A DNA stretch of 64,000 nt from Macrostomum lignano (Eukaryota): assembly GCA_002269645.1 (NCBI GenBank), contig NIVC01000843.1, forward strand, positions 62,001-126,000, given 5' to 3'. A model generated the notes under the pieces. That model saw nothing but the letters and a program-made list of their open reading frames with translations. It had not been told where the DNA came from and made no database searches. Positions within the stretch are counted from its first letter, which is position 1. The number at the start of each line of letters is the position of its first letter. This document shows, piece by piece, positions 1 through 21,700 of the stretch. A program made the position numbers and the translations under genes.

Positions 1-408
1 ATCTCCCCTGAGTTAATTGAGAGAATCTCCCCTGAGTTAATTGAGAGAATCTCCCCTGAGTTAATTGAGAGAATCTCCCCTGAGTTAATTGAGAGAATCT
101 CCCCTGAGTTAATTGAGAGAATCTCCCCTGAGTTAATTGAGAGAATCTCCCCTGAGTTAATTGAGAGAATCTCCCCTGAGTTAATTGAGAGAATCTCCCC
201 TGAGTTAATTGAGAGAATCTCCCCTGAGTTAATTGAGAGAATCTCCCCTGAGTTAATTGAGAGAATCTCCCCTGAGTTAATTGAGAGAATCTCCCCTGAG
301 TTAATTGAGAGAATCTCCCCTGAGTTAATTGAGAGAATCTCCCCTGAGTTAATTGAGAGAATCTCCCCTGAGTTAATTGAGTGAATCTCCCCTGAGTTAG
401 TTGAGAAA
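1..408. repeat. 24-bp minisatellite ATCTCCCCTGAGTTAATTGAGAGA (CMTR1 intron)
   Basis: About 17 near-perfect tandem copies; runs off the window start. Confidence 0.97.
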
Positions 409-610
409 ACCGCTGTTCTTCATGCTCTGCCTGAATCTCAATTGTGCCTGTATTTCTTCATCTGTTTGTTTCTTATGGTACGAGTACAAAGCAAGAATTT
501 TAGAACAGTGCACTAGGCACGTGTTACTCATACCTTGTTTGTAGAGTAGTGTCTTCATTACAGGGCATTGTGTTATTATGCCCAGGCTGTGTCTGGTGTT
601 TATCTACCTA

Positions 611-689
611 ATCTATATATCCACCTACATATCTATCTATCTATCTACATATCTATCTATCTATCTATCATTTTTCTATCTATCTATCC

Positions 690-738
<49 letters not shown>

Positions 739-752
739 ACATCTTTCTATCT
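611..752. repeat. (TATC)n microsatellite
   Basis: Direct reading. Confidence 0.95.
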
Positions 753-772
753 ATGCATCCCTCCCAAACCAG

Positions 773-3700
773 GTGGAAGGCCAGGAGAACATTCAAGAGA
801 TCCGCAGCAAGCAGCTTTACCTCTGCCAAGCCCTTACGGCTATGCTGGTACTTCGCTCCGGCGGCAGCTTCCTATGCAAACTATTCGACATCTTCACCGA
901 GTTTAGTGCCGGGCTCATGTACCTGCTTTACCTGGCGTTCGATCAGTTTGCCTTGTTCAAGCCCGCCACTAGTAGGCCAGCCAACTCAGAGCGCTACGTG
1001 ATCTGTCGAGGCTACCGCAAGCAGCAATCGGAGAGTATTGTGCAATACCTGCTGCTAGTTAATGCCGAAATTAATCTATTAAAAGTTGAAGCTGTGCATT
1101 TGCCGCAGTCCGAGAGGCAAGATGTTCAGGTGAGAGTTTTATAGTAAGAATTAGCTCAGGTGAGAGAAAATTAATTCATAAGGTGTAGCAGCAGCTCATC
1201 AAAGAGTTAATTAATTGATTAGGTGTAGCGGCGGCACATCAAAGAGCTAATTAAATCTTAGAGTGTAGCGGCGGCACATCAAAGAGCTAATTAAATCTTA
1301 GGGTGTAGCGGCGGCACATCAAAGAGCTAATTAAATCTTAGGGTGTAGCGGCGGCACATCAAAGAGTTAATTAATTTATTGGGTGTAGCGGCGGCACATC
1401 AAAGAGTTAATTAATTTATTGGGTGTAGCGGCGGCACATCAAAGAGCTAATTAAATCTTAGGGTGTAGCGGCGGCACATCAAAGAGCTAATTAAATCTTA
1501 GGGTGTAGCGGCGGCACATCAAAGAGTTAATTAATTTATTGGGTGTAGCGGCGGCACATCAAAGAACTCTATATTGAGTTAATTGGTGTAGCAACGGTAC
1601 TTTAAACGATCTTACTTTAAACGATCTAAAAGATCGTTTAAATTAACTGATTGAGTGTAGCGGCGGCACATCAAAGAGTTAATTAATTGATTGGGTGTAG
1701 CGGCGGCACATCAAAGAGTTTATTAACTGATTGGGTGTAGCGGCGGCACATCAAAGAGTTTAGGCCACTAAAAGATCATTTTAAATCCGTTCCCTACTAG
1801 GGCCTCGTTTCGCTGGACGTGCTCAAAGCTGACCGAGCATTTTCTGACTACTTGACCGAATCTAACGATACTCTTGGCCGAATGCAAATCGTTGGATTAT
1901 CCAAGATACATCATTTCTACGATAATCCAGGCATGAAGGTAAGTTAAAAGGATTAAGCGAATAAGTATTATTGTTTACAAATATTCAAACCCGAAGGTCT
2001 AATCTACTGATTGCAGGACACGAGACAAGAGGACACCCGCACAGAGTGCCTGCAGTTCTGGGGAATTCCGGACGAGAAGCGAGGAGAAAAAGTTTTAGGG
2101 AAAGAAAATCCAACGGTAGGGTTGACATCTTTGAGAATGCTGCTGCTGGGATTAGGGATTGGAGTGATGGGATTAGGGATGGCAGTGATGGGATTAAGGA
2201 TGGGAGTGATGGGATTAAGGATGAGAGTGATGGGATTAGGGATGGCAGTGATGGGATTAAGGATGGCAGTGATGGGATTAAGGATGGCAGTGATGGGATT
2301 AAGGATGAGAGTGATGGGATTAAGGATGAGAGTGATGGGATTAGGGATGGCAGTGATGGGATTAGGGATGGCAGTGATGGGATTAGGGATGACAGTGACG
2401 GGATTAAGGATGGGAGTGATGGGATTAAGGATGAGAGTGATGGGATTAGGGATGGCAGTGATGGGATTAAGGATGGGAGTGATGGGATTAAGGATGGCAG
2501 TGATGGGATTAAGGATGGGAGTGATGGGATTAAGGATGGGAGTGATGGGATTAAGGATGAGAGTGATGGGATTAAGGATGAGAGTGATGGGATTAGGGAT
2601 GGCAGTGATGGGATTAGGGACTGTACTAATGAATGAGATATGGCATTAAACTAGTTTAAATTGCATTCTCAGCAAGTTCGTTATTGTTTCCTATTTCAAG
2701 GTTCTCATCAGCCAGCTAATTGGCGAGGGAAACATGAGCAAACTGCTGCCCCCGGATGCCTCCAGTTCAGCCAAATCCGTCACTGCGGACAGCTTAGAGA
2801 AGAATCCCGATTTCTCACCGTACGAACAGCGAGCGATTGCTTGCGGAGAGGTTAACAAGGAAGTCATGCTGCTGTATTCGCGTGGAAATGGATCTGTTTT
2901 GGTCTACAAACCTGCCGAACGTGAGGCGTAAGTTATCTCTGAATTATTTCTGATCATCTCTGGTATAGCTTTCTGTCACTCTAAGATTGTGTCTAAAACT
3001 TCAGGTCACTCTTCTGGGATATTATCTAAGACATCTTGTCACTCTTAGTTCATACGTGAGACATTCTGTCACTCTAAGATCGTATCTAATCCTTATCTCT
3101 CTGAGATCGTATTTCGTATCTAATCCTTATTGTCACTCCGAGATCGTATCTAATCCAATTATTGTCACTCTGAGATCGTATCTAATCCAATTATTGTCAC
3201 TCTGATATCGTATCTAATCCTTATTGTCACTCTGAGATCACATCTAATCCTTATTGTCACTCTGAGATCATATATAATCAGTCTTGTCACTGATATCATA
3301 TCTAATCCTTATTGTCACTCTGAGATCACATCTAATCCTTATTGTCACTCTGAGATCATATATAATCAGTCTTGTCACTCTCAGTCTGATAAGTCTAATA
3401 AAAAGCCAACTTCAATAACTCAGCTGGACCGCACCGGACTCAAAATCGGCTGCTCAACGAGCCCCAATTCCTCGGGAAACTCTGCTACTTGCATTAAGCG
3501 TGTCCCAGCTGAAGCCGCCCAGCTACAAGCTTCGAGTTGCCTGCCTACAAATACTCGATTGTCCAATTTTGCAAGGCCAAAACCTGACTGACAAGCCGCT
3601 ATCAGATCGGCTAGCCTGTATTCGACAGCTGTGTTATTGTGCGAATTTTGAGCGAGTACCGTTGCGATCCAGGCTGCAACCGCCGGTGATCTTTCCCGTG

Positions 3701-4367
3701 TACGAGCTGCCGTCCGATTCGGCAGACAGTTTCAAGAAGCTGGTGCAAGTTCAAAAGATCAAAGGATCTGTTAAACCAATGCCAATGCTGAAACAGGAGG
3801 ATGGGTATCTGTTTGCTATCAAAGGATTGTACCTCTTTCGTGTTACAAGGTAAGTTTTGGTATAGAAATGAGATTGGAAATCCAATGGTGTAGAGTCCAT
3901 TGCTAAAGCTAATCCTAAATCTCTAAATGATGTAAAATCCATCTCTAAATGATGTAAAATCCATCTCTAAATGATGTAAAGTCCATCTTTATTTTATGTA
4001 AAATCCTTCCCTAATTAATGCTAATCCATCTCTAATTGATGTAAAATCCATTTCCAAATGCAAAGCCTGTCGCTAAATGATGTAAAGCATTCTCCTATAA
4101 ATTTTCTTAATTCACTTACCCATCAACCACCCGCGCAGGGATCCCTGGCGATTGACAATGTCTCAGAAGGCCAACAAGCTCTATTATTTCCACAAGGAGG
4201 GCAAAGCGCTAACGTGTTTCGAGTCAAGGCCAGAGTTTTTGCCAAATTATCGTCAACAAGTTGAGAGCATGATGTGGGTTGATTACGAGTCTGCTAACGA
4301 CAAAGAACTCGATGTGAAACGTCTGTTGCAATTGGTTGATAAGAAGCTTAACAGTAAAAGGAATTAA
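773..4367 (+). CDS. CMTR1: Cap-specific mRNA (nucleoside-2'-O-)-methyltransferase 1, 3' part (5' exons lie outside the window)
   Basis: Exons 773-1129, 1801-1938, 2017-2115, 2701-2927, 3424-3849, 4139-4367, all AG/GT-bounded and phase-compatible. Peptides [19 protein letters not shown]...KLFDIF...[18 protein letters not shown] (RrmJ/FtsJ-type MTase), [19 protein letters not shown]...QILD (guanylyltransferase-like) and [18 protein letters not shown] (WW-like) match the CMTR1 domain order. Confidence 0.93.
1183..1760. repeat. 40-bp minisatellite GGGTGTAGCGGCGGCACATCAAAGAGCTAATTAAATCTTA
   Basis: Tandem copies with variants, interrupted around 1570-1650. Confidence 0.95.
2148..2619. repeat. 21-bp minisatellite GGGATTAAGGATGGCAGTGAT
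   Basis: Tandem copies; source of spurious ORFs 1971-2636 and 2011-2649. Confidence 0.96.
2974..3381. repeat. About 30-bp minisatellite TGTCACTCTGAGATCATATCTAATCCTTAT
   Basis: Degenerate tandem copies. Confidence 0.9.
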
Positions 4368-4640
4368 GCTACTTTCAACGATTTTACATTCTGTTAGTTT
4401 TTTATGCCCAGTTATCTAATAGAAATTAGAATTAATAAGTACTTGTAGTTAAAAAATCTTGACTGTGGTAATTGGTGCGTGTATATCTATGTATCTAACA
4501 AATATTTGTTCTCATTAAAGCATTTTCTAACACAAACTAGCTTAGGTTTTTACCCCAGAATAGTTAATAGTCTTTTTGCATTCTCGTCACTTTAAAAGTA
4601 CACTTTAGTCCCAATTCAACCAACCGGCGTCCTGTAAACG

Positions 4641-6375: not shown

Positions 6376-9300
6376 ATGCCAAACGAAGGCAATCCGCCAG
6401 AAGATCTGCCCCAGCCAGACGATGGCACCCGGCCTGTGTTGCGCGAGCACTACCGTCCACCTCGAGGCGATCAAGAGCCCGACCAATTCAGAGCCCGCCT
6501 GCAAGCCGTTGCTGAGGAGGGCGGCTTTCCATTGGATCGTCTGCCTGGCCGACTGCTAATTCCTCAATACGATATCGTTATTGTCGGCGATCGGTATAAC
6601 GATCTGGCAGACATGGAATCGCTGCGCAGTCTGCTGCAGGAAATCCGCTTCGATGATAACACTGCGCCTAGGGTTCTGGTTAATGAGCCGCTGGCTGGCG
6701 AATCCGTGAGCATTAGGGATGGCGATTAGGGAGATATATAGTTAGAAAGACTTAAGGATTAGAAAGAGAATGAGGATTAGGGAGAGGTGGGGATCAGTGA
6801 GATTGGGATTAGGGAGAAATAGGAATTAGGGAGAGATAGGGATTAGAGAGAGATGGGATTAGAGAGAGGAGTTGCGATTAGAGAGAGATTGGGATTAGGG
6901 ATAGATGGGGATTAGGGAGATATAGGGATTAGAGATAGGAGATAGTGATTATAGAGATGAGGATTAGGGAGAGATAGGGATTAAGGAAAGATGAGGATTA
7001 GAGAAATATAGGGATTAAGGAGAGATGGGGATTAGGGAGAGATGGGGATTTGCGAGAGAAAGAGTGAGAAGTGTTACATAGGAAAAAGGTCAGTAAATAC
7101 TCGCTAATGAGTAGACTATTATGTGTATTTTCCTTTGTTAAAATTCTCAGCCGAAATCTATCCACTTGTCGCGCTTCTCCCTCCCTCCTTAATCCGCAGG
7201 CCAGCTACCTCTCCTGGCTCAACTCCGCCAACATTCGCAGCACGTTTGTATTCATCTACGTGACAAACGAATTCTTGCGGAACTCCGAGCGACTTCGCTA
7301 CATCGAAGAGCTGTACAATGAGAGCGTCTCGGGATCAGCTGATCGGCGCAATCGCATTGTGCCCGTGTTCGCTCCCGGAGTCGATGTGCACAGCATAGAG
7401 GAAATGTCCATTCCCGAGGCTGCTCTGTTTAGAAACCTGAGAGGCATGCGCCTTGAGATGGATCCGATGACTCGTCAGCTGAGATTGCGGTCTGGAGAGG
7501 TAAGAGCTGCGTCACTATGTAACATTAAAACTGATTGATCCCGATTCTGAAGTAATCGGTCCCGATTCTGAAGTAATTGGTCCCGATTCTAAAGTAATTG
7601 GTCCCGATTCTGAAGTGATTGGTCCCGATTCTAAAGTAATTGATCCCGATTCTGAAGTAATTGATCCCGATTCTAAAGTAATCGGTCCCGATCCTGAAGT
7701 AATTGGTCCCGATTCTGAAGTAATTGGTCTCGATTCTGAAGTAATTGGTCCCGATCCTGAAGTAATTGGTCCCGATCCTGAAGTAATTGGTCCCGATTCT
7801 GAAGTAATTGGTCTCGATTCTGAAGTAATTGGTCCCGATCCTGAAGTAATTGGTCCCGATTCTGAAGTAATTGGTCTCGATTCTGAAGTAATTGGTCCCG
7901 ATTCTAAAGTAATTGATCCCGATTCTGAAGTAATTGGTCCCGATTCTGAAGTAATTGGTCGGGGGGCCGTAGCCCAGCGGTAGCGCAGCTGCTCTGGTGT
8001 GCCAGCGACCCAGGCTCGATTCCAAGTGCAGCCACATTAATTTGGGGCTGAATTGGCATTTCGGCTTGGCTCGCTTGTGCAATTAACGGCCTTGAGAGCC
8101 AACCCCCCAAGGCGCAGTGAAGTGTACATGCCTAACAATTAATAAATTTAGGGCCGCTGTACACTCCTGTGTGAGTGTGTGCCTGCGTAACGTATCCGCG
8201 CGCTTGTATGCCTGCTCAGGGGAGTCGGCGGAATGGGCAGTAATGCCTCTCGCCGGTTGTGTGCCTATGTCGCCTAAAGTGCGCCAGGGTGCACACAACC
8301 CCCCTGCCTCTAATAATAAAAAAGTAATTGGTCCCGATTATAAAGTAATTGGTCCCGATTCTGAAGTAATTGGTCCCGATTCTAAAGTAATTGGTCCCGA
8401 TTCTGAAGTATTTGGTCCCGATTCTGAAGTATTTGATCCCGATTCTGAAGTAATTGATCCCGATTCTGAAGTAATTGGTCCCGATTCTGAAGTAATCGGT
8501 CCCGATCCTGAAGTAATTGGTCCCGATTCTGAAGTAATTGGTCTCGATTCTGAAGTAATTGGTCCCGATTCTGAAGTAATTGGTCTCGATTCTGAAGTAA
8601 TTGATCCCGATTCTAAAGTAATTGATCCTGATTCTGAAGTATTTGATCCCGATTCTGAAGTAATTGGTCCCGATCCTAAAGTAATTGGTCCCGATCCTGA
8701 AGTAATTGGTCCCGATTCTAAAGTAATTGATCCCGATTCTGAAGTAATTGGTCGCGATTCTAAAGTAATTGGTCCCGATTCTGAAGTAATTGGTCCCGAT
8801 CCTGAAGTAATTGGTCCCGATTCTAAAGTAATTGATCCCGATTCTGAAGTAATTGGTCCCGATTCTAAAGTAATTGATCCCGATTCTGAAGTAATTGATC
8901 CCGATTCTGAAGTAATTGGTCCCGATCCTAAAGTAATTGGTCCCGATTCTGAAGTAATTGGCCCCGATTCTAAAGTAATTGGTCCCGATTCTAAAGTAAT
9001 TGATCCCGATTCTGAAGTAATTGGTCCCGATTCTGAAGTAATTGATCCCGATTCTGAAGTAATTGATCCCGATTCTGAAGTAATTGATCCCGATTCTGAA
9101 GTAATTGATCCCGATTCTGAAGTAATTGATCCCGATTCTAAAGTAATTGATCCCGATTCTGAACTAATTGGTCCCGATTCTGAAGTAATTGATCCCGATT
9201 CTGAAGTAATTGATCCCGATTCTGAAGTAATTGATCCCGATTCTGAAGTAATTGATCCCGATTCTGAAGTAATTGGTCCCGATCCTAAAGTAATTGGTCC

Positions 9301-10787
9301 CGATTCTGAAGTAATTGGCCCCGATTCTAAAGTAATTGGTCCCGATTCTGAAGTATTTGATCCCGATTCTGAAGTAATTGGTCCCGATTCTAAAGTAATT
9401 GGTCCCGATTCTGAAGTAATTAATCCCGATTCTAAAGTAATTGATTCCGATTCTGAAGTAATTGGTCCCGATTCTAAAATAATTGATTCCGATTCTGAAG
9501 TAATTGGTCCCGATTCTGAAGTAATTGATCCCGATTCTGAAGTAATTGGTCCCGATTCTGAAGTAATTGATCCCGATTCTGAAGTAATTGATCCCGATTC
9601 TGAAGTAATTGATCCCGATTCTGAAGTAATTGATTCCGATTCTGAAGTAATTGATCCCGATTCTAAAGTAATTGGTCCGATTCTGAAGTAATTGGTCCCG
9701 ATTCTAAAGTAATTGGTCCCGATCCTAAAGTAATTGGTCCGATTCTGAAGTAATTGAGCTTGATCCTAAAGTAATTGGTCCCGATTCTGAAGTAATTGAT
9801 TCCGATTCTGAAGTAATTGATCCCAATCATGAAGTAATTGAACCCGATTCTAAAGTGATCCATCCCTTTCCTGAAGTGATCCATCCCTTTCCTGAAGTGA
9901 TCCATCCCTTTCCTGAAGTGATCCATCCCTTTCCTGAAGTGATCCATCCCTTTTCTGAAGTGATCCATCCTATCCTGAAGTGATCCATCCCTATCGATCC
10001 TGAAGTGATCCATTCTGATCCGATCCTAAAAAATTGATTGCAATCCTGAAGGAACTGGTTTCAGTGTTAATAGAACCATCCCCATCGTGAATACAGCCAT
10101 CTCAGCTATGCAGGCATCGTGAACAATGTCCCTTATTCCCAACAGCTGGGCCAGGTGCGCCAGCTGCTGCGCACCCGCCTCAACCAGCGCCGCAGTCGGG
10201 AGAACGTCCAGATCGAACAGGTTCGAGATGAAATCGCCCGGGCCAACAACCGCGAAGGCGCCCGCCTCATCGACCAGCTGGCCAGCTTCTTCGCCCAACG
10301 GATGCGCCTATCCGAAGAGGATGTGAAACGCTTGCGAGCCCCATTGGACGCTGTGCTGCAACACCACGGCGAGCCGCTGCCGTCAACTGAGCAGCGGACC
10401 ACTCTGCAGCCGCAAGAAGTTAGCAGCCAGCAGACTCCGTTGGATTCTGGTCACGCTACTATGGCTACTGTTAGTAGGGGCAATTCTCAAGTAGATATGC
10501 AGCAGACGTCTCAGCAGTCCATCCAGCAGCCGCGCCAGCAACCTCTCCAGCAACCGCAAGCTGCCGCCGCCGCCCAACAGGTGGTTAATAATCCGGAAAA
10601 TGTTCAAGTTGGCAGCGCTAATCAGCTGTCAGTTCGAGGTCAAACTGTTCACGTACACGTCACCTATGTGCAGCAGTTTGTAGCGGGCGCTACCGAGGCG
10701 CATCAGCATGCTCAAGGCGGCGAAGATGCTGAAGGAGCTCAGGGCGGCGGCGGAGTCGGAACCGGCGGAAACTATCGACAGGCTTGA
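6376..10787 (+). CDS. TIR-domain protein with Gln-rich tail and C-terminal RHIM motif (TRIF/TICAM-like adaptor architecture), about 447 aa
   Basis: Exon 1 6376-6705 (ATG preceded by in-frame TGA TAA; donor GTGAGC), exon 2 7200-7499 (CCGCAG acceptor, GTAAGA donor), exon 3 about 10074-10787 (only phase-0 acceptor found; uncertain). TIR-like pattern: YDIVIVG (betaA), RSTFVFIYVTNEFL (betaC), EELYNESV (alphaC), NRIVPVF (betaD), LFRNLRGMRL. RHIM-like VVNNPENVQVGSANQLSVRG at 10581-10640. Family assignment is by pattern recognition. Confidence 0.75.
6726..7050. repeat. GA-rich degenerate repeat (GGGATTAGGGAGAGAT)
   Basis: Intron 1 of the TIR gene. Confidence 0.88.
7535..10021. repeat. 21-bp minisatellite GAAGTAATTGGTCCCGATTCT, interrupted by a SINE and ending in variant unit GTGATCCATCCCTTTCCTGAA
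   Basis: Intron 2 of the TIR gene; source of the VIGPDSE-repeat ORFs. Confidence 0.97.
7961..8321 (+). mobile_element. tRNA-derived SINE, family 1, apparently full length
   Basis: tRNA-like head with A-box TAGCCCAGCGG and B-box GGCTCGATTCC; (TAA)nA tail; flanked by AAGTAATTGGTC at 7949-7960 and 8322-8333. A second copy lies at 44575-44790. Confidence 0.85.
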
Positions 10788-10947
10788 ATAAGTTTGACTT
10801 TTCTCTGTGTAGCATAGCAATGTCAGGTTTCCTTTATTCAGCTTGCTTATGATTTTGTTATTGATGTTAGTGGCAACAAGTCTGCATTGACTCTGTGTTC
10901 ACTTTTTATGATCAGGTGGGGTCGATTAGATAGGTGGGATTGATTCA

Positions 10948-11370
10948 ATAGATGGGATTGGTCAGGTAAGAATCAGATAGGATTGGTCAGGTGGGATTGG
11001 TCAGGTGAGATTGGTCAGGTGGGATTGATCAGGTGGGATTGGTCAGTTGGGATTGGTCAGGTGGGATTGGTCAGGTGGGATTAATCAGGTGGGATTGATC
11101 AGGTGGGATTAATCAGGTGGGATTAATCAGGTGGGATTAATCAGGTGGGATTAATCAGGTGGGATTGATCAGGTGGGATTAATCAGGTGGGATTGGTCAG
11201 GTGGGATTAATCAGGTGGGATTGATAAGGTCGGATTAATCAGGTGGGATTGGTCATGTGGGATTAATCAGGTGGGATTAATCAGGTGGGATTGATCAGGT
11301 GGGATTGGTCAGGTGGGATTAATCAGGTGGATTGATCAGGTGGGATTAATCAGGTGGGAATCAGATGGGA
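10948..11370. repeat. 14-bp minisatellite CAGGTGGGATTAAT
   Basis: Direct reading. Confidence 0.95.
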
Positions 11371-13506: not shown

Positions 13507-15242
13507 AGTCTACCTGTGCCACATCCGCAATATTCAAGGCTATCTTGATAATCCAACGAGGACCGTTCGATCTGCCATCGTCAGTGAGCTCTGCCGATGG
13601 TGCTCTGCAATCATCGTTAATTAACCTTAAAGAAGAAGAACATTTAGGCAATGTCTGCATTGCATCAAGGCTATTCGGCTGCAATGGTAAGTTACGGCCA
13701 AATTTTTTATACGGCTCGTAGATTCAAATACGGCAGAGTAGCATTGACATTGTTATTTAGCTCTCCAGAATAGGACATCAGCTCTCCATTTGAGCCAGTT
13801 AGCATCTCAGCAACTCCCCATTGAGCCAATTGGCATCTCAGCAACTCCCCATTGAGCCAATTGGCATCTCAGCAACTCCCCATTGTGAGCCAATTGGCAT
13901 CTCAGCAACTCCGCATTGGGCCAATTGGCATCTCAGCAACTCCCCACTGAGCCAATTGGCATCTCAGCAACTCCCCATTGTGAGCCAATTGGAATCTCAG
14001 CAACTCCCCATTGAGCCAATTGGCATCTCAGCAACTCCCCATTGTGAGCCAATTGGCGTCTCAGCAACTCCCCATTGAGCCAATTGGCATCTCAGCAACT
14101 CCCCATTGAGCCAATTGGCATCTCAGCAACTCCCCATTGTGAGCCAATTGGCATCTCAGCAACTCCCCATTGTGAGCCAATTGGCATCTCAGCAACTCCC
14201 CATTGAGCCAATTGGCATCTCAGCAACTCCCCATTGTGAGCCAATTGGCATCTCAGCAACTCCCCATTGTGAGCCAATTGGCATCTCAGCAACTCCCCAT
14301 TGAGCCAATTGGCATCTCAGCAACTCCCCATTGTGAGCCAATTGGCATCTCAGCTACTTAAAAGTCTATAAGAATAATCTTCTATAAAAGTCAGTCTATT
14401 ACAAGTCCTTTTTCCTCTCCCATCGCGCAGCTCTGTGCCGTCACCTTGTCAGCTTGTCAGATCGTCATGTACCGCGGCCGCTACTACAAGTAGTGAAACT
14501 CAGCATTAAGCGCCATTGTGAGCAATGTGTGCAGCTTAGGCAGGTACAAGCGAAGAAACAAATCAATGTTCTCCTAGTGCCAACTAGTCTACCAGTAGCT
14601 TTGACATCCATCTCCAACTCGCCTTACGGATGTCAGTTATTAAATAATCTTCTATCGAGCAAGTCAAAAGCTACAATTCTGCTAGCTAGGCAGGCTTGGC
14701 TACTACCATATCGATCGCTTAATTTAGCTTGGTTCGACCGGCTGCTCAGCCTGCTTTGTCGGGCAATTGCTTTGGATGCACTTTTAGCTTGGCTATCAAC
14801 TCTGGGCGGCGGATTCTCCAACCTGGGCGATTCGTTTGCTGATGCTGCATCGATTGCTGGCGAAATTGCTTGTCGACAGTTTCGTGTTGCTATGGAGTTG
14901 GACGATGCCGAGTTGCAGTGCCGCTGCTGTATCTGGTACGCTCAGAGTCTGCTGCAGCGCGGCTTCATCAGCAGGGCTGCTAGGCTGCTTCGATCGGCTT
15001 ACGTTGCTTCTGTAAGGCGACCGGACGTGTCCGGGGATCCCAGGATTCGACTCATGTGTCTGGGCGTCTGGCGAAAGCTGCAAGCTGCTCAGATCAAGCG
15101 GCGACTCGATCGGTCTAGAAAATATCTACTAGGAGCAGAAACAATAGCGACTAAGGAAAATGGACAGTCGTCTCAATCGGAGAGGTTACTGTATCGATCT
15201 TATGACACGTCTGCTATTGTTGGTGCTATCATCAAAGTCTGA
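13507..15242 (+). CDS. DUF4807 / C. elegans F58A4.6-like conserved uncharacterised protein (5' end unresolved)
   Basis: Main exon 14431-15242 contains LLAWLSTLGGGFSNLGDSF...AGEIACRQFRVAMELDD...RCCIWYAQSLLQRG...RIRLMCLGVWRKL, the DUF4807 signature as I recall it. A phase-compatible candidate upstream exon is 13507-13686 (GTAAGT donor). No start codon identified. Confidence 0.72.
13786..14355. repeat. 31/33-bp minisatellite GAGCCAATTGGCATCTCAGCAACTCCCCATT(GT)
   Basis: Direct reading. Confidence 0.96.
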
Positions 15243-15305
15243 TGACTGATCATTGTTTCTTTTAAAAAAGCAACTTCCAAGAAAACGAATTTTAATTTCG
15301 ATCTC

Positions 15306-16604: not shown

Positions 16605-17088
16605 ATGGCCACAAGGCCGGTAACGCACCTAGCTGTTTACCGTACTTTCAATTCCTTGTAAATCCTTCCCGAGTTATTCATTTTTTCTTTTTATGTTTCT
16701 TTTTTACTAATGATGAAGAAAGCATAAGAAATGCTATAGGTTAGCTTAACTCTGAGAACTACATATTTACCTATACTTTAGGTCTGTTTTCGTACGAAGA
16801 TAAGCTTACCGTAAATAGATTTACATATTTACAGGTGTTTACTTATGTGTGGAAACACGATTTATAATCTGTTTACAAGTTAATAGATCAACTTGTATGA
16901 TTGTATCATTGAGCTATAGAGATGAAACAATACAGACAGGCAGACAGACGGACACACAGACAGACAGACAGACAGACAGACATAGGCAGACAGACAGACA
17001 TAGGCAGGCTGGCAGACAGACAGGCAGACAGACAGACATAGGCAGGCAGACAGACAGACAACAGACAGACAGACAGACAGACAGACAT

Positions 17089-17139
<51 letters not shown>

Positions 17140-17327
17140 GGCAGACAGACATAGGCAGACAGACAGACATAGGCAGGCAGGCAGACAGACAGGCAGACAG
17201 ACAGACATAGGCAGACAGACAGACATAGGCAGGCTGGCAGACAGACAGGCAGACAGACAGACATAGGCAGGCTGGCAGACAGACAGGCAGACAGACAGAC
17301 ATAGGCAGGCAGACAGACAGACAGACA

Positions 17328-17382
<55 letters not shown>

Positions 17383-17643
17383 GGCAGACAGACATAGGCA
17401 GACAGACAGACATAGGCAGGCAGGCAGACAGACAGGCAGACAGACAGACATAGGCAGACAGACAGACATAGGCAGGCTGGCAGACAGACAGGCAGACAGA
17501 CAGACATAGGCAGGCAGACAGACAGACAGACAGACAGACAGACAGGCAGGCAGACAGATAGACAGACAGACAGACAGACAGGCAGGCAGGCAGGCAGACA
17601 GATAGACATAGGCAGACAGACAGACAGACAGACATAGGCAGGC

Positions 17644-17696
<53 letters not shown>

Positions 17697-17759
17697 TAGG
17701 CAGGCAGGCAGGCAGGCAGGCAGACAGACAGACAGGCAGGCAGGCAGGCAGGCAGACAC

Positions 17760-17815
<56 letters not shown>

Positions 17816-18021
17816 CAGACAGGCAGGCAGGCAGGCAGACAGACAGACAGACAGGCAGGCAGGCAGGCAGACAGGCAGACAGACAGACACACAGACAGAC
17901 AGGCAGGCAGGCAGGCAGGCAGGCAGACAGGCAGACAGACAGACAGACAGACAGACACACAGACAGACAGACAGACAGACAGACAGGCAGGCAGGCAGGC
18001 AGACACACAGACAGACCGACA

Positions 18022-18056
<35 letters not shown>

Positions 18057-18289
18057 GGCAGGCAGGCAGGCAGACAGACAGGCAGACAGACAGACATAGG
18101 CAGACAGACAGACATAGGCAGGCTGGCAGACAGACAGGCAGACAGACAGACATAGGCAGGCAGACAGACAGACAGACAGACAGACAGGCAGGCAGGCAGA
18201 CAGATAGACAGACAGACAGACAGGCAGGCAGGCAGGCAGGCAGACAGATAGACATAGGCAGACAGACAGACAGACAGACATAGGCAGGC

Positions 18290-18330
<41 letters not shown>

Positions 18331-18331
18331 T

Positions 18332-18365
<34 letters not shown>

Positions 18366-18397
18366 ACAGACAGACAGGCAGGCAGGCAGGCAGACAC

Positions 18398-18465
<68 letters not shown>

Positions 18466-18574
18466 CAGACAGGCAGGCAGGCAGGCAGACAGACAGACAG
18501 ACAGGCAGGCAGGCAGGCAGACAGGCAGACAGACAGACACACAGACAGGCAGGCAGGCAGGCAGGCAGACAGGC

Positions 18575-18611
<37 letters not shown>

Positions 18612-18675
18612 CACAGACAGACAGACAGACAGACAGACAGGCAGGCAGGCAGGCAGACACACAGACAGACCGACA

Positions 18676-18710
<35 letters not shown>

Positions 18711-21700
18711 GGCAGGCAGGCAGGCAGACAGACACACAGACAGACAGGTGCACTCAGCAAGCAGCATGCCCAATGCAATACATATAACTATTATATTTCA
18801 GGATTACCCGCCGCAATCATCGGAAGAGAGCAGCTCCAGTCTGCTATTCTCTGTGCCGCAAACTTTAGGCCCGACGCCTCCTGTAAGTGATGGAATCGCT
18901 GCTTTGTTCTCTCGGGCTTGTTATTTAATTTATATTTGAAGAGCATAGGCTTTTAAAGCATAGTTAGAATAAAAATTTGTGCTTTTTAATTATAATATCA
19001 GCTCCGATGTTCGACCAATGCTACTACTAGTAGCAACGAGGTGACAACAGATTTTGAAGTGTCGTACGATCATACCGCTTCCCAGGCCGTCGAAGTCGCA
19101 GAAGATTTGCCGGCTTCTGAGGAGGCCGCAGCTGCCGCCTACGCGTTGCCAAGCGGTCAAGAGTTGCCCGGAAATCGGCTTGATTCTGCTTCTGGAAGCA
19201 GCGGCAGCAACAGCGGTAAGACTAATTTAGAAATAAAAACAAATTTATAAAATTTAGAATCCCTAGCTTAAGAGTTGTCTATAGAATCGCCAAGATAAAC
19301 CTTATAGATTCGCCAAAATAGACCCTCTAGATTTACCTAGATAATCCCTCTAGATTTGCCAAGATAGACCCTCTAGATTTACCTAGATAAGCCCTCTAGA
19401 TTTGCCAAGATAGACCCTCTAGATTTACCTAGATAAGCCCTCTAGATTTGCCAAGATAGACCCTCTAGATTTACCTAGATAAGCCCTCTAGATTTGCCAA
19501 GATAGACCCTCTAGATTTACCTAGATAAGCCCTCTAGATTTGCCAAGATAGACCCTCTAGATTTACCTAGATAAGCCCTCTAGATTTGCCAAGATAGACC
19601 CTCTAGATTTACCTAGATAAGCCCTCTAGATTTGCCAAGATAGACCCTCTAGATTTACCTAGATAAGCCCTCTAGATTTGCCAAGATAGACCCTCTAGAT
19701 TTACCTAGATAAGCCCTATAGATTTGCCAAGATAAGCCCTATAGATTTGCCAAGATAGACCTTATAAATTCGTCAAGATAGACCTTATAGATTCGGCAAG
19801 ATAGACCTTATAGATTCGGCAAGATAGACCTTATAGATTCGCCAAGATAGGCCTTATAGATTCGGCAGGATAAACCTTATATATTCGGCAAGATAGGCCT
19901 TATATATTCGGCAAGATAGGCCTTATAGATTCGGCAGGATAAACCTTATAGATTCGGCAAGATAGGCCTTATAGGCAAGATAAACCTTATCTATTCGCCA
20001 AGAAAGACCTTATAGATTCGCCATGACAAGCTCTAAGAGATTAGCTTTTTATCTCATCGCCCTCAGCAAAAGAAACGCCAGCGCCCATCGTTCATGCCAG
20101 TCGCTTAGGCGACAAAGAAGATGAAGAGAAGGATGATGAAGCTACCGCGCCAAATCAGCATCAGCCGCCCCAGTTGCTGGTTGGAGCCACCACTGCCAGT
20201 ACTAGCGATGGTGCAACCAGAACTCGAAGCACCGCTTTTTGCGCCTCTGAGACCAGCAGTGATTGGTTAGTTTTTTATTTTTGTTTTTGAGCACAACCTG
20301 TAAGCAGACTCGTATAGACATTGCTGACTCTCAGCATCCCTCTCACAGAGACTCCTGACTCTCAAAATCCCTCTCACAGAGACTCCTGACTCTCAATACA
20401 CCTTCACATAGACTCCTGACTCTCAAAATCCCTCTCACAGAGACTCCTGACTCTCAAAATCCCTCTCACAGAGACTCCTGACTCTCAAAATCCCTCTCAC
20501 AGAGACTCCTGACTCTCAAAATCCCTCTCACAGAGACTCCTGACTCTCAAAATCCCTCTCACAGAGACTCCTGACTCTCAGTACCGTCTTCAGAGAGACA
20601 AAGAGATCGAGACAGAGATCCCTGAATCTCAGGGCCTAATTAATCGGCGACTCTAATTCCCAGATTAACTAGTATAACTCCCTAATCTCTAAGAATCCCG
20701 AATTACTGAGTTGTCCCTCTTATTGCTCTTTAGCCTAACTTCTAAATTTTTCTCCTGCGACTGCTATTCAGATCCTCAATGCCTCAGCCCAGTGAGCAGA
20801 TGTGCAACCGACAGCTCAGCCGCAGCTATTGCGCGGCGCATCTGAAGGCTGCTTTCGGCTGTTCAGTCCAAGGACTGGTGGGGGGGGGGGTCGCCACACA
20901 CACCCTCAATTACCCCAGCCAATGCTGGCACCCATTTTACAGCTGGGTGAACTGAAGCAATGCAGAGTTAGGTCAGTGTTTTACTCAAGGACACAAATTG
21001 TTCGAATGGGATCGGGAATCGAACCCCCCACCTCTAAGTCGTGAATCCGACGCTCTAACCAGTAGGTTACAGCTCCCTAGTTAATACATGCAATGGTTTC
21101 TATGCAGCCTTTGCTAGCTGTTATTAATATATAATCATTTATAAATGTACTCCAGCGACTATCGGCAGCCTTCATATTTTGTCGGCTCTGATCCGCCAAT
21201 AGTGATTGACTCGGGCCCGGAGTCTCAGGCTAGACAGCAGCAGCAGATTCTGCCGCCGCCACCGCCGCCGCCGCCGCCGCCCTCTGGCGGCAACCGCAAG
21301 CGGGCTTGCAACACTGGCTCGGGCACTGATGCAGGGTTGTCTGATCAGTCTGGCTCCAGCAACACTCCTCGAAGCGGCCGGAAACGACAAAAGCAGCAGC
21401 AGCAGCCTCCTCAGCCTCAGCCGCCGCCGCCTTCTCCTCCGCCCCGACAGTCGACATCTTCGACTAATTCGTCATTATTTTCTTCGGCGTCGATGGCTTC
21501 TTCGGCTGCAGCGTTGGCTGGTAGCCAATTGTTTTTTTTTTATTTTACCTTTTTGTGTCTGTAGAAACGAGCTGTGCTTGAATTATTCTTCAAAATTGCT
21601 CTCAAAATGGGAAGATTTGGAGAATTGCTCAAAGTGAGAAGATTTGGGGGATTTCTGAAAATAGGAAAGATTTGATGATTCCTCAATGAGGGAATGAGAA

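What the first reader, a model, noticed from the sequence alone, without database searches (positions are those of the whole stretch)
6376..10787. TIR + RHIM adaptor (TRIF-like architecture) hidden in three repeat-separated exons: candidate amyloid-based immune or cell-death signalling in a probable flatworm
Seen: three phase-0 exons join into a protein of about 447 aa. It has a TIR-like beta/alpha pattern (YDIVIVG...RSTFVFIYVTNEFL...EELYNESV...NRIVPVF), a helical linker, a Gln-rich tract and VVNNPENVQVGSANQLSVRG. Established: RHIMs of RIPK1/RIPK3/TRIF/ZBP1 have a (I/V)Q(I/V/L)G core with upstream I/V-x-N and downstream N-x-hydrophobic residues, and form signalling amyloids. TIR plus C-terminal RHIM is the architecture of vertebrate TRIF. 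Inference: this is an invertebrate TIR-RHIM adaptor that may nucleate an amyloid signalosome with an unknown RHIM-bearing effector. No receptor, death domain, TM segment or obvious pLxIS motif is visible in the protein. The ORF track splits it into three unrelated fragments.
Basis: partly seen in the sequence, partly recalled or inferred. Interest (0 to 1): 0.88.

Follow-up and report, generated by a model that had tools for sequence, protein, structure and literature searches.

The report
Flatworm orphan gene, possible TIR-RHIM protein
This is a real, already-annotated but uncharacterised gene of the flatworm Macrostomum lignano. Its protein looks like a TIR domain joined to a RHIM amyloid motif (the layout of the vertebrate immune adaptor TRIF), but no statistical or structural test confirms either part.

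Summary
The window is Macrostomum lignano DNA, identical to GenBank contig NIVC01000843.1. The three exons are real and already annotated as hypothetical protein PAA76082.1.

All the quoted peptides are present. The protein has a disordered N-tail, a ~155-aa (beta-alpha)5 domain, an Arg/Leu-rich helical region and a 27%-Gln linker. These are followed by a 34-aa Val/Gln/Asn beta-prone island and a Gly-rich tail. The island carries an exact match to the published RHIM consensus [IV]Q[ILV]GxxNx[MLI].

Neither key assignment reaches significance.
- TIR: there are no Pfam, PADLOC, NCBIfam or PDB sequence hits. TIR profiles give 4-7 bits, and the shuffle-based p-value runs from 0.001 (hmmsearch) to 0.26 (hhalign). 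AlphaFold models are low confidence (pLDDT 41-46), although TIR domains rank top or near top in both fold searches.
- RHIM: the regex is met (p about 6e-4 for this protein, but about 11 chance hits expected per proteome). The Pfam RHIM model finds nothing.

No orthologue exists outside M. lignano. TLRs are reported absent in this species, and TRIF's other motifs are missing. It is an intriguing candidate, not a demonstrated TIR-RHIM adaptor and not a TRIF homologue.

The parts
6376..6705 (+). Exon 1 (codons 1-110): Pro/Glu-rich N-tail (residues 1-50), then the start of the alpha/beta domain (betaA YDIVIV, alphaA, betaB RVLV, loop NEPLAGES)
   Evidence: identical to the GenBank model; AlphaFold secondary structure
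6706..7199 (+). Intron 1 (GT..AG), mostly a 17-bp minisatellite (6724-7059)
   Evidence: 5.5-5.8% divergent from the second copy against 1.6% for the CDS
7200..7499 (+). Exon 2 (codons 111-210): alphaB, betaC TFVFIYVTNEFLRN, alphaC, betaD RIVPVFA and the rest of the (beta-alpha)5 domain. This is the only segment that aligns robustly to TRAM/TRIF TIRs.
7500..10145 (+). Intron 2 as annotated: 21-bp minisatellite arrays (7534-7960, 8322-9856, 9853-10013), interrupted by a 361-bp unique insert at 7961-8321
   Evidence: the insert is absent from the second copy; intron length 2646 against 1342 nt
10074..10145 (+). Optional 72 nt (24 codons, NHPHREYSHLSYAGIVNNVPYSQQ).
   Evidence: 1/72 differences between the copies against 3/60 just upstream, not significant
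10146..10787 (+). Exon 3 as annotated (codons 211-423 plus stop): helical region, Gln-rich linker, beta-prone island, Gly/Ala tail
   Evidence: this model reproduces PAA76082.1 and, in L002, PAA93411.1 exactly
10371..10580 (+). Gln/Ser/Thr/Pro-rich low-complexity linker (residues 286-355, 27% Gln, ending in poly-Ala)
   Evidence: pLDDT below 50
10581..10682 (+). 34-residue Val/Gln/Asn-rich beta-prone island VVNNPENVQVGSANQLSVRGQTVHVHVTYVQQFV (residues 356-389). It is the candidate amyloid-forming module.
   Evidence: beta-propensity equal to the core strand of the alpha/beta domain; strands predicted at 370-373 and 376-379
10602..10628 (+). VQVGSANQL: exact match to the RHIM core consensus [IV]Q[ILV]GxxNx[MLI]
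   Evidence: register compared with verified RIPK1/RIPK3 RHIMs
10683..10787 (+). Gly/Ala-rich C-terminal tail (residues 390-423) and stop codon

Best explanation
Shown: this is a lineage-restricted, expressed-type, three-exon gene of Macrostomum lignano. It is under purifying constraint and exists in two syntenic copies. It encodes a modular cytosolic protein with a disordered N-tail, a ~155-aa (beta-alpha)5 domain, an ~80-aa Arg/Leu-rich helical region and a Gln-rich disordered linker. These are followed by a 34-aa beta-prone island carrying a canonical RHIM core, and a Gly-rich tail.

Inferred: the alpha/beta domain is a very divergent TIR-type domain, closest to the TICAM (TRAM/TRIF) type. 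It would mediate stimulus-dependent homo- or hetero-oligomerisation. Bringing the tails together would then nucleate a RHIM-type cross-beta (amyloid-like) assembly of the island. That assembly would recruit or activate another RHIM-bearing protein, for example a RIPK1-like kinase of the kind reported in other spiralians.

This would make it work like TRIF or amphioxus bbtTICAM without being their orthologue. Because flatworms lack TLRs, it would act downstream of some other TIR protein or sensor.
For: Real gene:
- GenBank model over the same coordinates.
- Syntenic second copy with the same splice sites.
- CDS 1.6% divergent against 3.8% for unique non-coding sequence, p=0.005; pN/pS 0.60.

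TIR-like domain:
- (beta-alpha)5 topology in two independent AlphaFold runs.
- In-register alignment of betaA to betaC against validated TIR profiles, where FVFIYVTNEFLRN pairs with WTILLLTENFLRD and the BB-loop Gly is kept.
- hmmsearch score exceeded by only 1-2 of 3000 shuffles.
- Human TRIF's own TIR falls below Pfam's cutoff (23.9 against 28 bits), so a Pfam miss is weak evidence against.

RHIM-like motif:
- Exact regex match, unique in the window, p about 6e-4 per protein.
- The upstream V-x-N and downstream N-x-L-x-V positions match verified RIPK1/RIPK3 RHIMs.
- It sits in a beta-prone island between disordered Gln-rich and Gly-rich tracts, the layout described for RHIM and HET-s motifs (PMC4262963).
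- Canonical RHIM-bearing RIPK1 exists in other spiralians (PMC12119088).
Against: - No significant hit to any TIR or RHIM model in Pfam, PADLOC, NCBIfam or PDB sequences.
- Calibrated hhalign is unimpressive: 26% of shuffles reach the real score against the general TIR profile, 4% against TICAM.
- With structure-preserving window shuffles, the hmmsearch p-value rises to 2-4%.
- Both AlphaFold models are low confidence (pLDDT 41-46), and no Foldseek hit has E <= 0.001. Generic flavodoxin-like folds are interleaved with the TIRs.
- A RIPK1/3-derived RHIM HMM gives 0.7 bits, p about 0.009, and the motif ranks 6th of 966 six-frame decoys.
- About 11 chance regex matches are expected per proteome.
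- No orthologues are available to show conservation.
- Identity of the island between the two copies is explained by gene conversion, because the 3' flank is also identical.
- TLRs are absent in M. lignano, and there is no TRAF6 or pLxIS motif.
Confidence: 0.33

Rival explanations
1. An orphan protein with a generic flavodoxin-like alpha/beta domain and a prion-like low-complexity tail. Both the TIR resemblance and the RHIM regex match are coincidental, and the function is unrelated to RHIM or TIR signalling.
For: - All curated profile libraries are silent.
- PDB sequence searches are empty.
- hhalign scores are indistinguishable from shuffles for the general TIR profile.
- The RHIM HMMs fail.
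- About 11 chance regex hits are expected per proteome, and the tail is rich in Val, Gln and Asn, which favours such a match.
- Lumazine synthase and HGPRT folds score close to the TIRs.
- pN/pS 0.6 indicates only weak constraint.
Against: - Several independent weak signals all point to TIR and not to another alpha/beta family.
- The RHIM match extends beyond the 9-mer to flanking consensus positions.
- It lies in a discrete beta-prone island and not inside the Gln-rich tract itself.
- The two features occur in the same order as in TRIF.
Confidence: 0.35
2. The N-domain is a genuine divergent TIR domain, but the tail is not a RHIM. The Gln-rich region and beta-prone tail simply promote self-association or condensation of a TIR scaffold or NADase, as aggregation does for C. 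elegans TIR-1/SARM1.
For: - The TIR hints listed above.
- Flatworms keep about 20 TIR proteins despite lacking TLRs (PMC7958881).
- TIR-1 aggregation controls its activity (PMC11492801, abstract listed).
- A Glu is present near the expected alphaC position (YIEEL), read from the sequence.
- The RHIM profile models fail.
Against: The TIR fold itself is unproven. The exact RHIM consensus, including flanks, would then be coincidence. No NADase motif was tested.
Confidence: 0.15
3. The C-terminal island is a genuine RHIM or amyloid signalling motif, but the N-terminal domain is a non-TIR alpha/beta domain. The protein would be a new RHIM architecture, like the varied RHIM proteins of amphioxus.
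For: The RHIM consensus and its context. Invertebrate RHIMs occur in many domain architectures (PMC4262963). Generic alpha/beta folds score close to the TIRs.
Against: TIR is consistently the best-ranked fold. RHIM HMM support is weak.
Confidence: 0.12
4. Gene-model artefact: the ORFs are chance reading frames between minisatellites and not a functional protein-coding gene.
For: The protein has no homologues outside M. lignano, and pN/pS is not significantly below 1.
Against: - Three long in-phase ORFs with canonical splice sites are conserved in a second syntenic copy.
- Exons are significantly less divergent than introns.
- GenBank annotates both copies independently.
Confidence: 0.03

Closest known systems
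Vertebrate TRIF/TICAM1
   Same: The order of modules is the same: a TIR-type domain followed, after a long linker, by a C-terminal RHIM with the [IV]Q[ILV]GxxNx[MLI] core. The only alignable segment (BB loop, alphaB, betaC) resembles TRAM/TRIF most closely.
   Different: - No detectable homology.
- No TRIF N-terminal domain, pLxIS or TRAF6 motifs.
- 423 aa instead of about 712.
- A helical Arg/Leu-rich region and a Gln-rich linker take the place of TRIF's Pro-rich regions.
- The organism lacks TLRs.
Amphioxus bbtTICAM
   Same: It is a non-vertebrate TIR adaptor reported to signal to RIP through a RHIM without inducing interferon (PMC6043800). Functionally it is the nearest precedent.
   Different: bbtTICAM is a recognisable TICAM homologue in a chordate that has TLRs. 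PMC9440496 did not find a RHIM domain or motif in Leptocardii sequences. The flatworm protein is an orphan in a protostome.
RIPK1/RIPK3 RHIM amyloid cores (PDB 7dac, 9hr6, 8ib0)
   Same: VQVG is identical to the human RIPK3 tetrad. The I/V-x-N positions upstream and N-x-[LM]-x-[IVM] positions downstream are shared.
   Different: The conserved Tyr/Asn positions of RIPK RHIMs (I-Y-N, N-Y) are replaced. The Pfam RHIM model does not detect the peptide and the local HMM gives 0.7 bits. There is no kinase or death domain.
Drosophila IMD-pathway cRHIM proteins (PGRP-LC/LE, Imd, Pirk)
   Same: They are the invertebrate precedent for divergent RHIM-like motifs that form signalling amyloids in immunity without causing cell death (PMC13506858; PMC9387487).
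   Different: cRHIMs have a degenerate VxxG core, whereas the flatworm motif has the canonical vertebrate-type VQVG..N.L. No PGRP or death domain is present.
Fungal HET-s/NWD2 amyloid signalling motifs
   Same: A short beta-prone motif flanked by unstructured regions that transmits an oligomerisation signal by templating (PMC4262963).
   Different: There are no two-repeat 21-aa units, and no HeLo or NACHT partner domain is evident.
SARM1 / C. elegans TIR-1
   Same: TIR proteins conserved in TLR-less or TLR-poor invertebrates. Their activity is switched by aggregation.
   Different: No SAM or ARM domains are present. NADase residues were not established. Similarity is below detection.

Membership tests
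TIR domain superfamily (Pfam PF01582 / PF13676) | Match to a TIR profile HMM at or above the curated cutoff | tested here: not met
   hmmscan at E<=10 found no family for the whole protein or the isolated domain. PADLOC and NCBIfam also found none. Caveat: human TRIF's TIR also misses the TIR_2 cutoff, 23.9 against 28 bits.
TIR domain superfamily (Pfam PF01582 / PF13676) | Sub-threshold but significant profile similarity in the correct register | tested here: inconclusive
   hmmsearch --max gave 7.3 bits (TICAM profile) and 4.0 bits (general TIR profile validated on PDB). These were exceeded by 1-2 of 3000 shuffles, but by 2-4% of 4-residue window shuffles. hhalign gave P=0.02. After calibration, 4% (TICAM) and 26% (general) of shuffles reach the real score.
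TIR domain superfamily (Pfam PF01582 / PF13676) | Five-stranded parallel (beta-alpha)5 fold of about 140 aa, structurally similar to solved TIRs | tested here: inconclusive
   The (beta-alpha)5 topology appears in both models, but at pLDDT 40.7 and 45.8. Foldseek gave MAL TIR prob 0.90, TMt 0.41 at E=0.019; L6 and RUN1 TIRs ranked 1-3 at E 0.16-0.37 with TM about 0.25. No hit reached E<=0.001.
TIR domain superfamily (Pfam PF01582 / PF13676) | Box 1 (F/Y-D-x-F-I/V-S), BB-loop (RDxxPG) and box 3 (FW) motifs | tested here: inconclusive
   Read from the sequence and the alignments. Y-D-I-V-I-V fits box 1 partly. In the loop NEPLAGES the Gly is kept but the Pro position is Ala. No FW box is present; TRAM and TRIF also lack a clear one.
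RHIM (Pfam PF12721) | Core tetrad (V/I)-Q-(V/I/L/C)-G | tested here: met
   VQVG at residues 363-366 of the 423-aa protein, window 10602-10613. The definition comes from PMC13506858.
RHIM (Pfam PF12721) | Extended consensus [IV]Q[ILV]GxxNx[MLI] | tested here: met
   VQVGSANQL matches. It is unique in the six-frame window and appears in about 6e-4 of shuffles of the protein, but about 11 chance hits are expected per 2.5e7-residue proteome. The regex comes from PMC9440496.
RHIM (Pfam PF12721) | Match to the RHIM profile HMM (cutoff 20 bits) | tested here: not met
   No hit at E<=10, while human RIPK3 scores 41.3 bits and RIPK1 23.9 bits. The local RIPK1/3 HMM gives 0.7 bits, and 44 of 5000 shuffles do as well.
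RHIM (Pfam PF12721) | An 18-25-residue beta-prone segment flanked by unstructured sequence | tested here: met
   The Val/Gln/Asn island at 356-389 lies between a 27%-Gln linker and a 32%-Gly tail and has top-ranked beta propensity. The flanks have low pLDDT and strands are predicted at 370-379.
RHIM (Pfam PF12721) | Conservation of the core in orthologues | not testable with these tools
   No homologue is found outside M. lignano in 5.8 billion or 1.84 billion sequences. The island is identical in the second copy, but so is at least 400 nt of 3' flank, which indicates gene conversion.
RHIM (Pfam PF12721) | Amyloid formation and homotypic binding to another RHIM protein | not testable with these tools
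   This needs ThT/EM and interaction assays, and a search of the M. lignano proteome, which is not available here.
TRIF/TICAM1 orthologue | Detectable sequence homology to TICAM proteins | tested here: not met
   BLASTP against TRAM TIR gives E=5.3. Exhaustive phmmer finds only M. lignano. Only 44 columns align, at 25% identity.
TRIF/TICAM1 orthologue | TRIF N-terminal domain, pLxIS motif and TRAF6-binding motifs | tested here: not met
   No Pfam domain is found, and the regex scans are empty.
TRIF/TICAM1 orthologue | Acts downstream of TLR3/TLR4 | tested here: not met
   By the literature only: no TLRs were found in the M. lignano genome (PMC8609888).

The most novel reading that the evidence does not exclude
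A protostome that has lost all Toll-like receptors nevertheless encodes a TIR-type domain fused to a canonical RHIM. This would be the first TRIF-like (TIR to amyloid) adaptor outside the chordates. It would have arisen either by convergence or as a fast-evolving relic of an ancient bilaterian TIR-RHIM module. It would imply a RHIM amyloid signalling or cell-death pathway in flatworms, with partners still unidentified.
Probability: 0.2. Interest if true: 0.8.

Novelty: new variant of a known kind. Interest (0 to 1): 0.45.

Why it matters
Reviews state that no TRIF homologue exists in non-chordates before amphioxus (PMC6043800), and that TRIF, ZBP1 and MLKL are absent from 'lower phyla' (PMC13506858). 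A TIR-RHIM protein in a flatworm would therefore move the pairing of TIR oligomerisation with RHIM amyloid nucleation back to, or independently into, the Spiralia. It would do so in an animal without TLRs. It would also give the experimentally tractable, transgenic, regenerating model M. lignano a handle on amyloid-based immune or cell-death signalling. If the resemblance is coincidental, the locus is simply one more lineage-specific orphan gene with a prion-like tail.

Tried and rejected
- Pfam, PADLOC and NCBIfam scans of the whole protein and its parts at E<=10 found nothing.
- phmmer of the whole protein, the tail and the isolated domain against PDB sequences found no relevant hit.
- Word-indexed and exhaustive homology searches found only M. 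lignano copies. A search with the RHIM-like peptide alone found no candidates.
- AlphaFold single-sequence runs (full length and domain only) were both low confidence. I deliberately did not supply a TIR-containing alignment, because that would have forced a TIR model.
- hhalign against TIR profiles is not distinguishable from shuffles for the general profile.
- A local RIPK1/3 RHIM HMM gave weak support.
- The possible second RHIM-like motif IVNNVPYSQQLGQVRQL, in the optional 24 aa, is not significant. 6.6% of shuffles reach its score, and both GenBank models splice it out.
- Using the second copy to show selection on the RHIM island failed. Both CDS ends and the 3' flank are identical, so gene conversion explains the identity.
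- ARAGORN and Rfam on the intron-2 insert found no tRNA.
- A literature search for the gene ID, and a supplement search for flatworm RIPK1, both found nothing.
- I rejected TRIF orthology, the idea that the gene is hidden or unannotated, and the 10074 acceptor as the main junction.

Full report
**Observation**

Exons 6376-6705, 7200-7499 and 10074-10787 are each a multiple of three in length. They have GT/AG borders and join into a 447-aa ORF that holds every quoted peptide. The introns are almost entirely 17-bp and 21-bp minisatellites, in a window dense with such arrays.

The best database match is Macrostomum lignano 'hypothetical protein BOX15_Mlig032176g1', PAA76082.1. Its gene spans exactly 4412 bp on contig NIVC01000843.1, and the window is identical to that contig with 0 mismatches in 20.8 kb. 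The flatworm guess is therefore right, but the gene is already annotated, without any function or domain.

A second, syntenic copy (PAA93411.1 on NIVC01000029.1) has the same G-patch/FtsJ and DUF4807 neighbours. Exactly the same three splice sites reproduce its protein. The 10146 acceptor also has the better polypyrimidine tract.

**Is it a real gene?**

Between the two copies the CDS differs at 1.57% of positions. Unique intron and 5' flank sequence differs at 5-6%, and all unique non-coding sequence together at 3.8% (Fisher p=0.005). pN/pS is 0.60 from 13 nonsynonymous and 7 synonymous changes, which is not significant on its own. The exons are therefore constrained.

All 20 differences lie in codons 103-345. 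Both ends of the CDS and at least 400 nt beyond the stop are identical (P about 1.6e-5 under uniformity), which points to patchy gene conversion. The perfect identity of the RHIM-like island between copies is therefore not evidence of selection on it.

**Anatomy (423-aa numbering)**

| Residues | Feature |
|---|---|
| 1-50 | Pro/Glu/Arg-rich tail |
| 51-206 | alpha/beta domain |
| 207-285 | Arg/Leu/Gln-rich helices |
| 286-355 | 27%-Gln low-complexity linker ending in poly-Ala |
| 356-389 | VVNNPENVQVGSANQLSVRGQTVHVHVTYVQQFV, 29% Val |
| 390-423 | 32%-Gly tail |

The 356-389 island has beta-propensity equal to the core strand of the alpha/beta domain. There is no TM segment and no TRAF6 or pLxIS motif.

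**TIR test**

Curated libraries are silent at E<=10: Pfam, PADLOC and NCBIfam. phmmer against PDB sequences also finds nothing. An exhaustive phmmer search of 1.84 billion representatives finds only M. lignano, so no deep alignment can be built.

I built a TICAM TIR profile and a general TIR profile. The general profile was validated by recovering TRAM, TRIF, TLR1/2/6/10, MyD88, MAL and SARM1 in PDB. Results with these profiles were as follows.

- hmmsearch --max gives 7.3 and 4.0 bits, aligned in the correct register (YDIVIV on betaA, the BB-loop Gly, FVFIYVTNEFLRN on WTILLLTENFLRD).
- These scores are exceeded by only 1-2 of 3000 global shuffles.
- They are exceeded by 2-4% of shuffles that preserve local composition.
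- hhalign gives P=0.02. When calibrated, 4% (TICAM) and 26% (general) of shuffles reach the real score.
- Only 44 columns align robustly, at 25% identity to TRAM.

Two single-sequence AlphaFold runs give a (beta-alpha)5 topology at low confidence, pLDDT 40.7 and 45.8. In the Foldseek searches TIR domains rank first or near first. MAL scores prob 0.90 with TMt 0.41, and L6, L6 and RUN1 take ranks 1-3 for the domain-only model. However, E is at least 0.007, TM is 0.25-0.41, and lumazine synthase and HGPRT folds are interleaved.

As calibration, human TRIF's own TIR scores 23.9 bits, below Pfam's 28-bit cutoff. My reading is that TIR is the best single guess for this domain, at roughly even odds, but it is unproven.

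**RHIM test**

VQVGSANQL meets the published tetrad (PMC13506858) and the extended regex [IV]Q[ILV]GxxNx[MLI] (PMC9440496). It is the only match in six frames of the window. It appears in about 6e-4 of shuffles of the protein, yet about 11 chance matches are expected per proteome.

Aligned to verified RHIMs from fibril structures (human RIPK3 PLVNIYNCSGVQVGDNNYLTM, human RIPK1 IKYTIYNSTGIQIGAYNYMEIG), the flanking I/V-x-N and N-x-L-x-V positions also agree. The Pfam RHIM model scores RIPK3 at 41 bits and RIPK1 at 24 bits but finds nothing here. A local RIPK1/3 HMM gives 0.7 bits, p about 0.009.

The context fits Kajava et al.'s description of RHIM and HET-s motifs: a discrete beta-prone island between disordered tracts (PMC4262963).

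**Comparison with known systems**

- TRIF is a TIR followed by a C-terminal RHIM. [quoted passage not shown]
- Flatworms, including M. lignano, lack TLRs (PMC8609888) but retain TIR proteins (PMC7958881).
- RIPK1 homologues with a RHIM tetrad exist in zebra mussel and other spiralians (PMC12119088).
- Divergent RHIMs occur in several invertebrates (PMC4262963).

The flatworm protein fails the TRIF membership tests on homology, NTD, pLxIS, TRAF6 motifs and an upstream TLR. At most it works like TRIF.

**Verdict**

This is a real, constrained, lineage-restricted gene. Its product plausibly joins a TIR-like oligomerisation domain to a RHIM-type amyloid motif. Each assignment rests on sub-threshold evidence, and I put the joint reading at about 0.2-0.35. 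The candidate is worth a targeted follow-up: Macrostomum orthologues, RNA-seq junctions, a proteome-wide RHIM scan and a fibril assay.

Noticed in passing
window 7961-8321 (intron 2): A 361-bp unique insert interrupts the 21-bp minisatellite. It starts GGGGGGCCGTAGCCCAGCGGTAGCGC, with sequences that look like tRNA box A and box B, and ends in an A-rich tail. AAGTAATTGGTC flanks it on both sides. It resembles a tRNA-derived SINE and is absent from the second gene copy, so it inserted after the duplication. ARAGORN and Rfam do not call a tRNA.
   Followed up: partly
This stretch differs at 1/72 positions between the gene copies, against about 5% for adjacent intron sequence, and its AG is conserved. 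An alternative-acceptor isoform with two RHIM-like motifs cannot be excluded.
   Followed up: partly
window 6376-6681 and 10551-11187; L002 equivalents: All 20 CDS differences between the two M. lignano copies lie in codons 103-345. The first 102 codons, the last 78 codons and at least 400 nt of 3' flank are identical, whereas the introns and 5' flank differ by 5-6%. This pattern suggests patchy gene conversion between the duplicated loci.
   Followed up: yes
window 6706-7199 and 7500-10145; L002 6331-7024 and 7325-8666: Intron lengths differ strongly between the copies (494/2646 against 694/1342 nt) because of minisatellite copy number. The 21-bp unit core occurs 62 times here and 7 times in the other copy.
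   Followed up: yes
whole window 1-64000: The density of 12-46-bp minisatellite arrays is very high (56 TRF rows with score >=200). It includes a 1.8-kb (ACAG)n tract at 16932-18747 that produces spurious ORFs of more than 600 aa on the minus strand.
   Followed up: no
window about 1-4368, 13540-15243 and from 18803 (from L001 coordinates): The neighbouring annotated genes are a G-patch + FtsJ methyltransferase (cap 2'-O-methyltransferase-like, 807 aa) upstream, and a DUF4807 protein (319 aa) and a 1001-aa protein downstream. The first two are syntenic at the second copy.
   Followed up: partly
P0002 / P0003 (UniProt A0A1I8ISF7, A0A1I8F5C6): Gene models of this gene from the older M. lignano assembly are frameshifted or chimeric. 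One is named 'SGNH domain-containing protein' because of a fused upstream segment. They add no independent information.
   Followed up: partly
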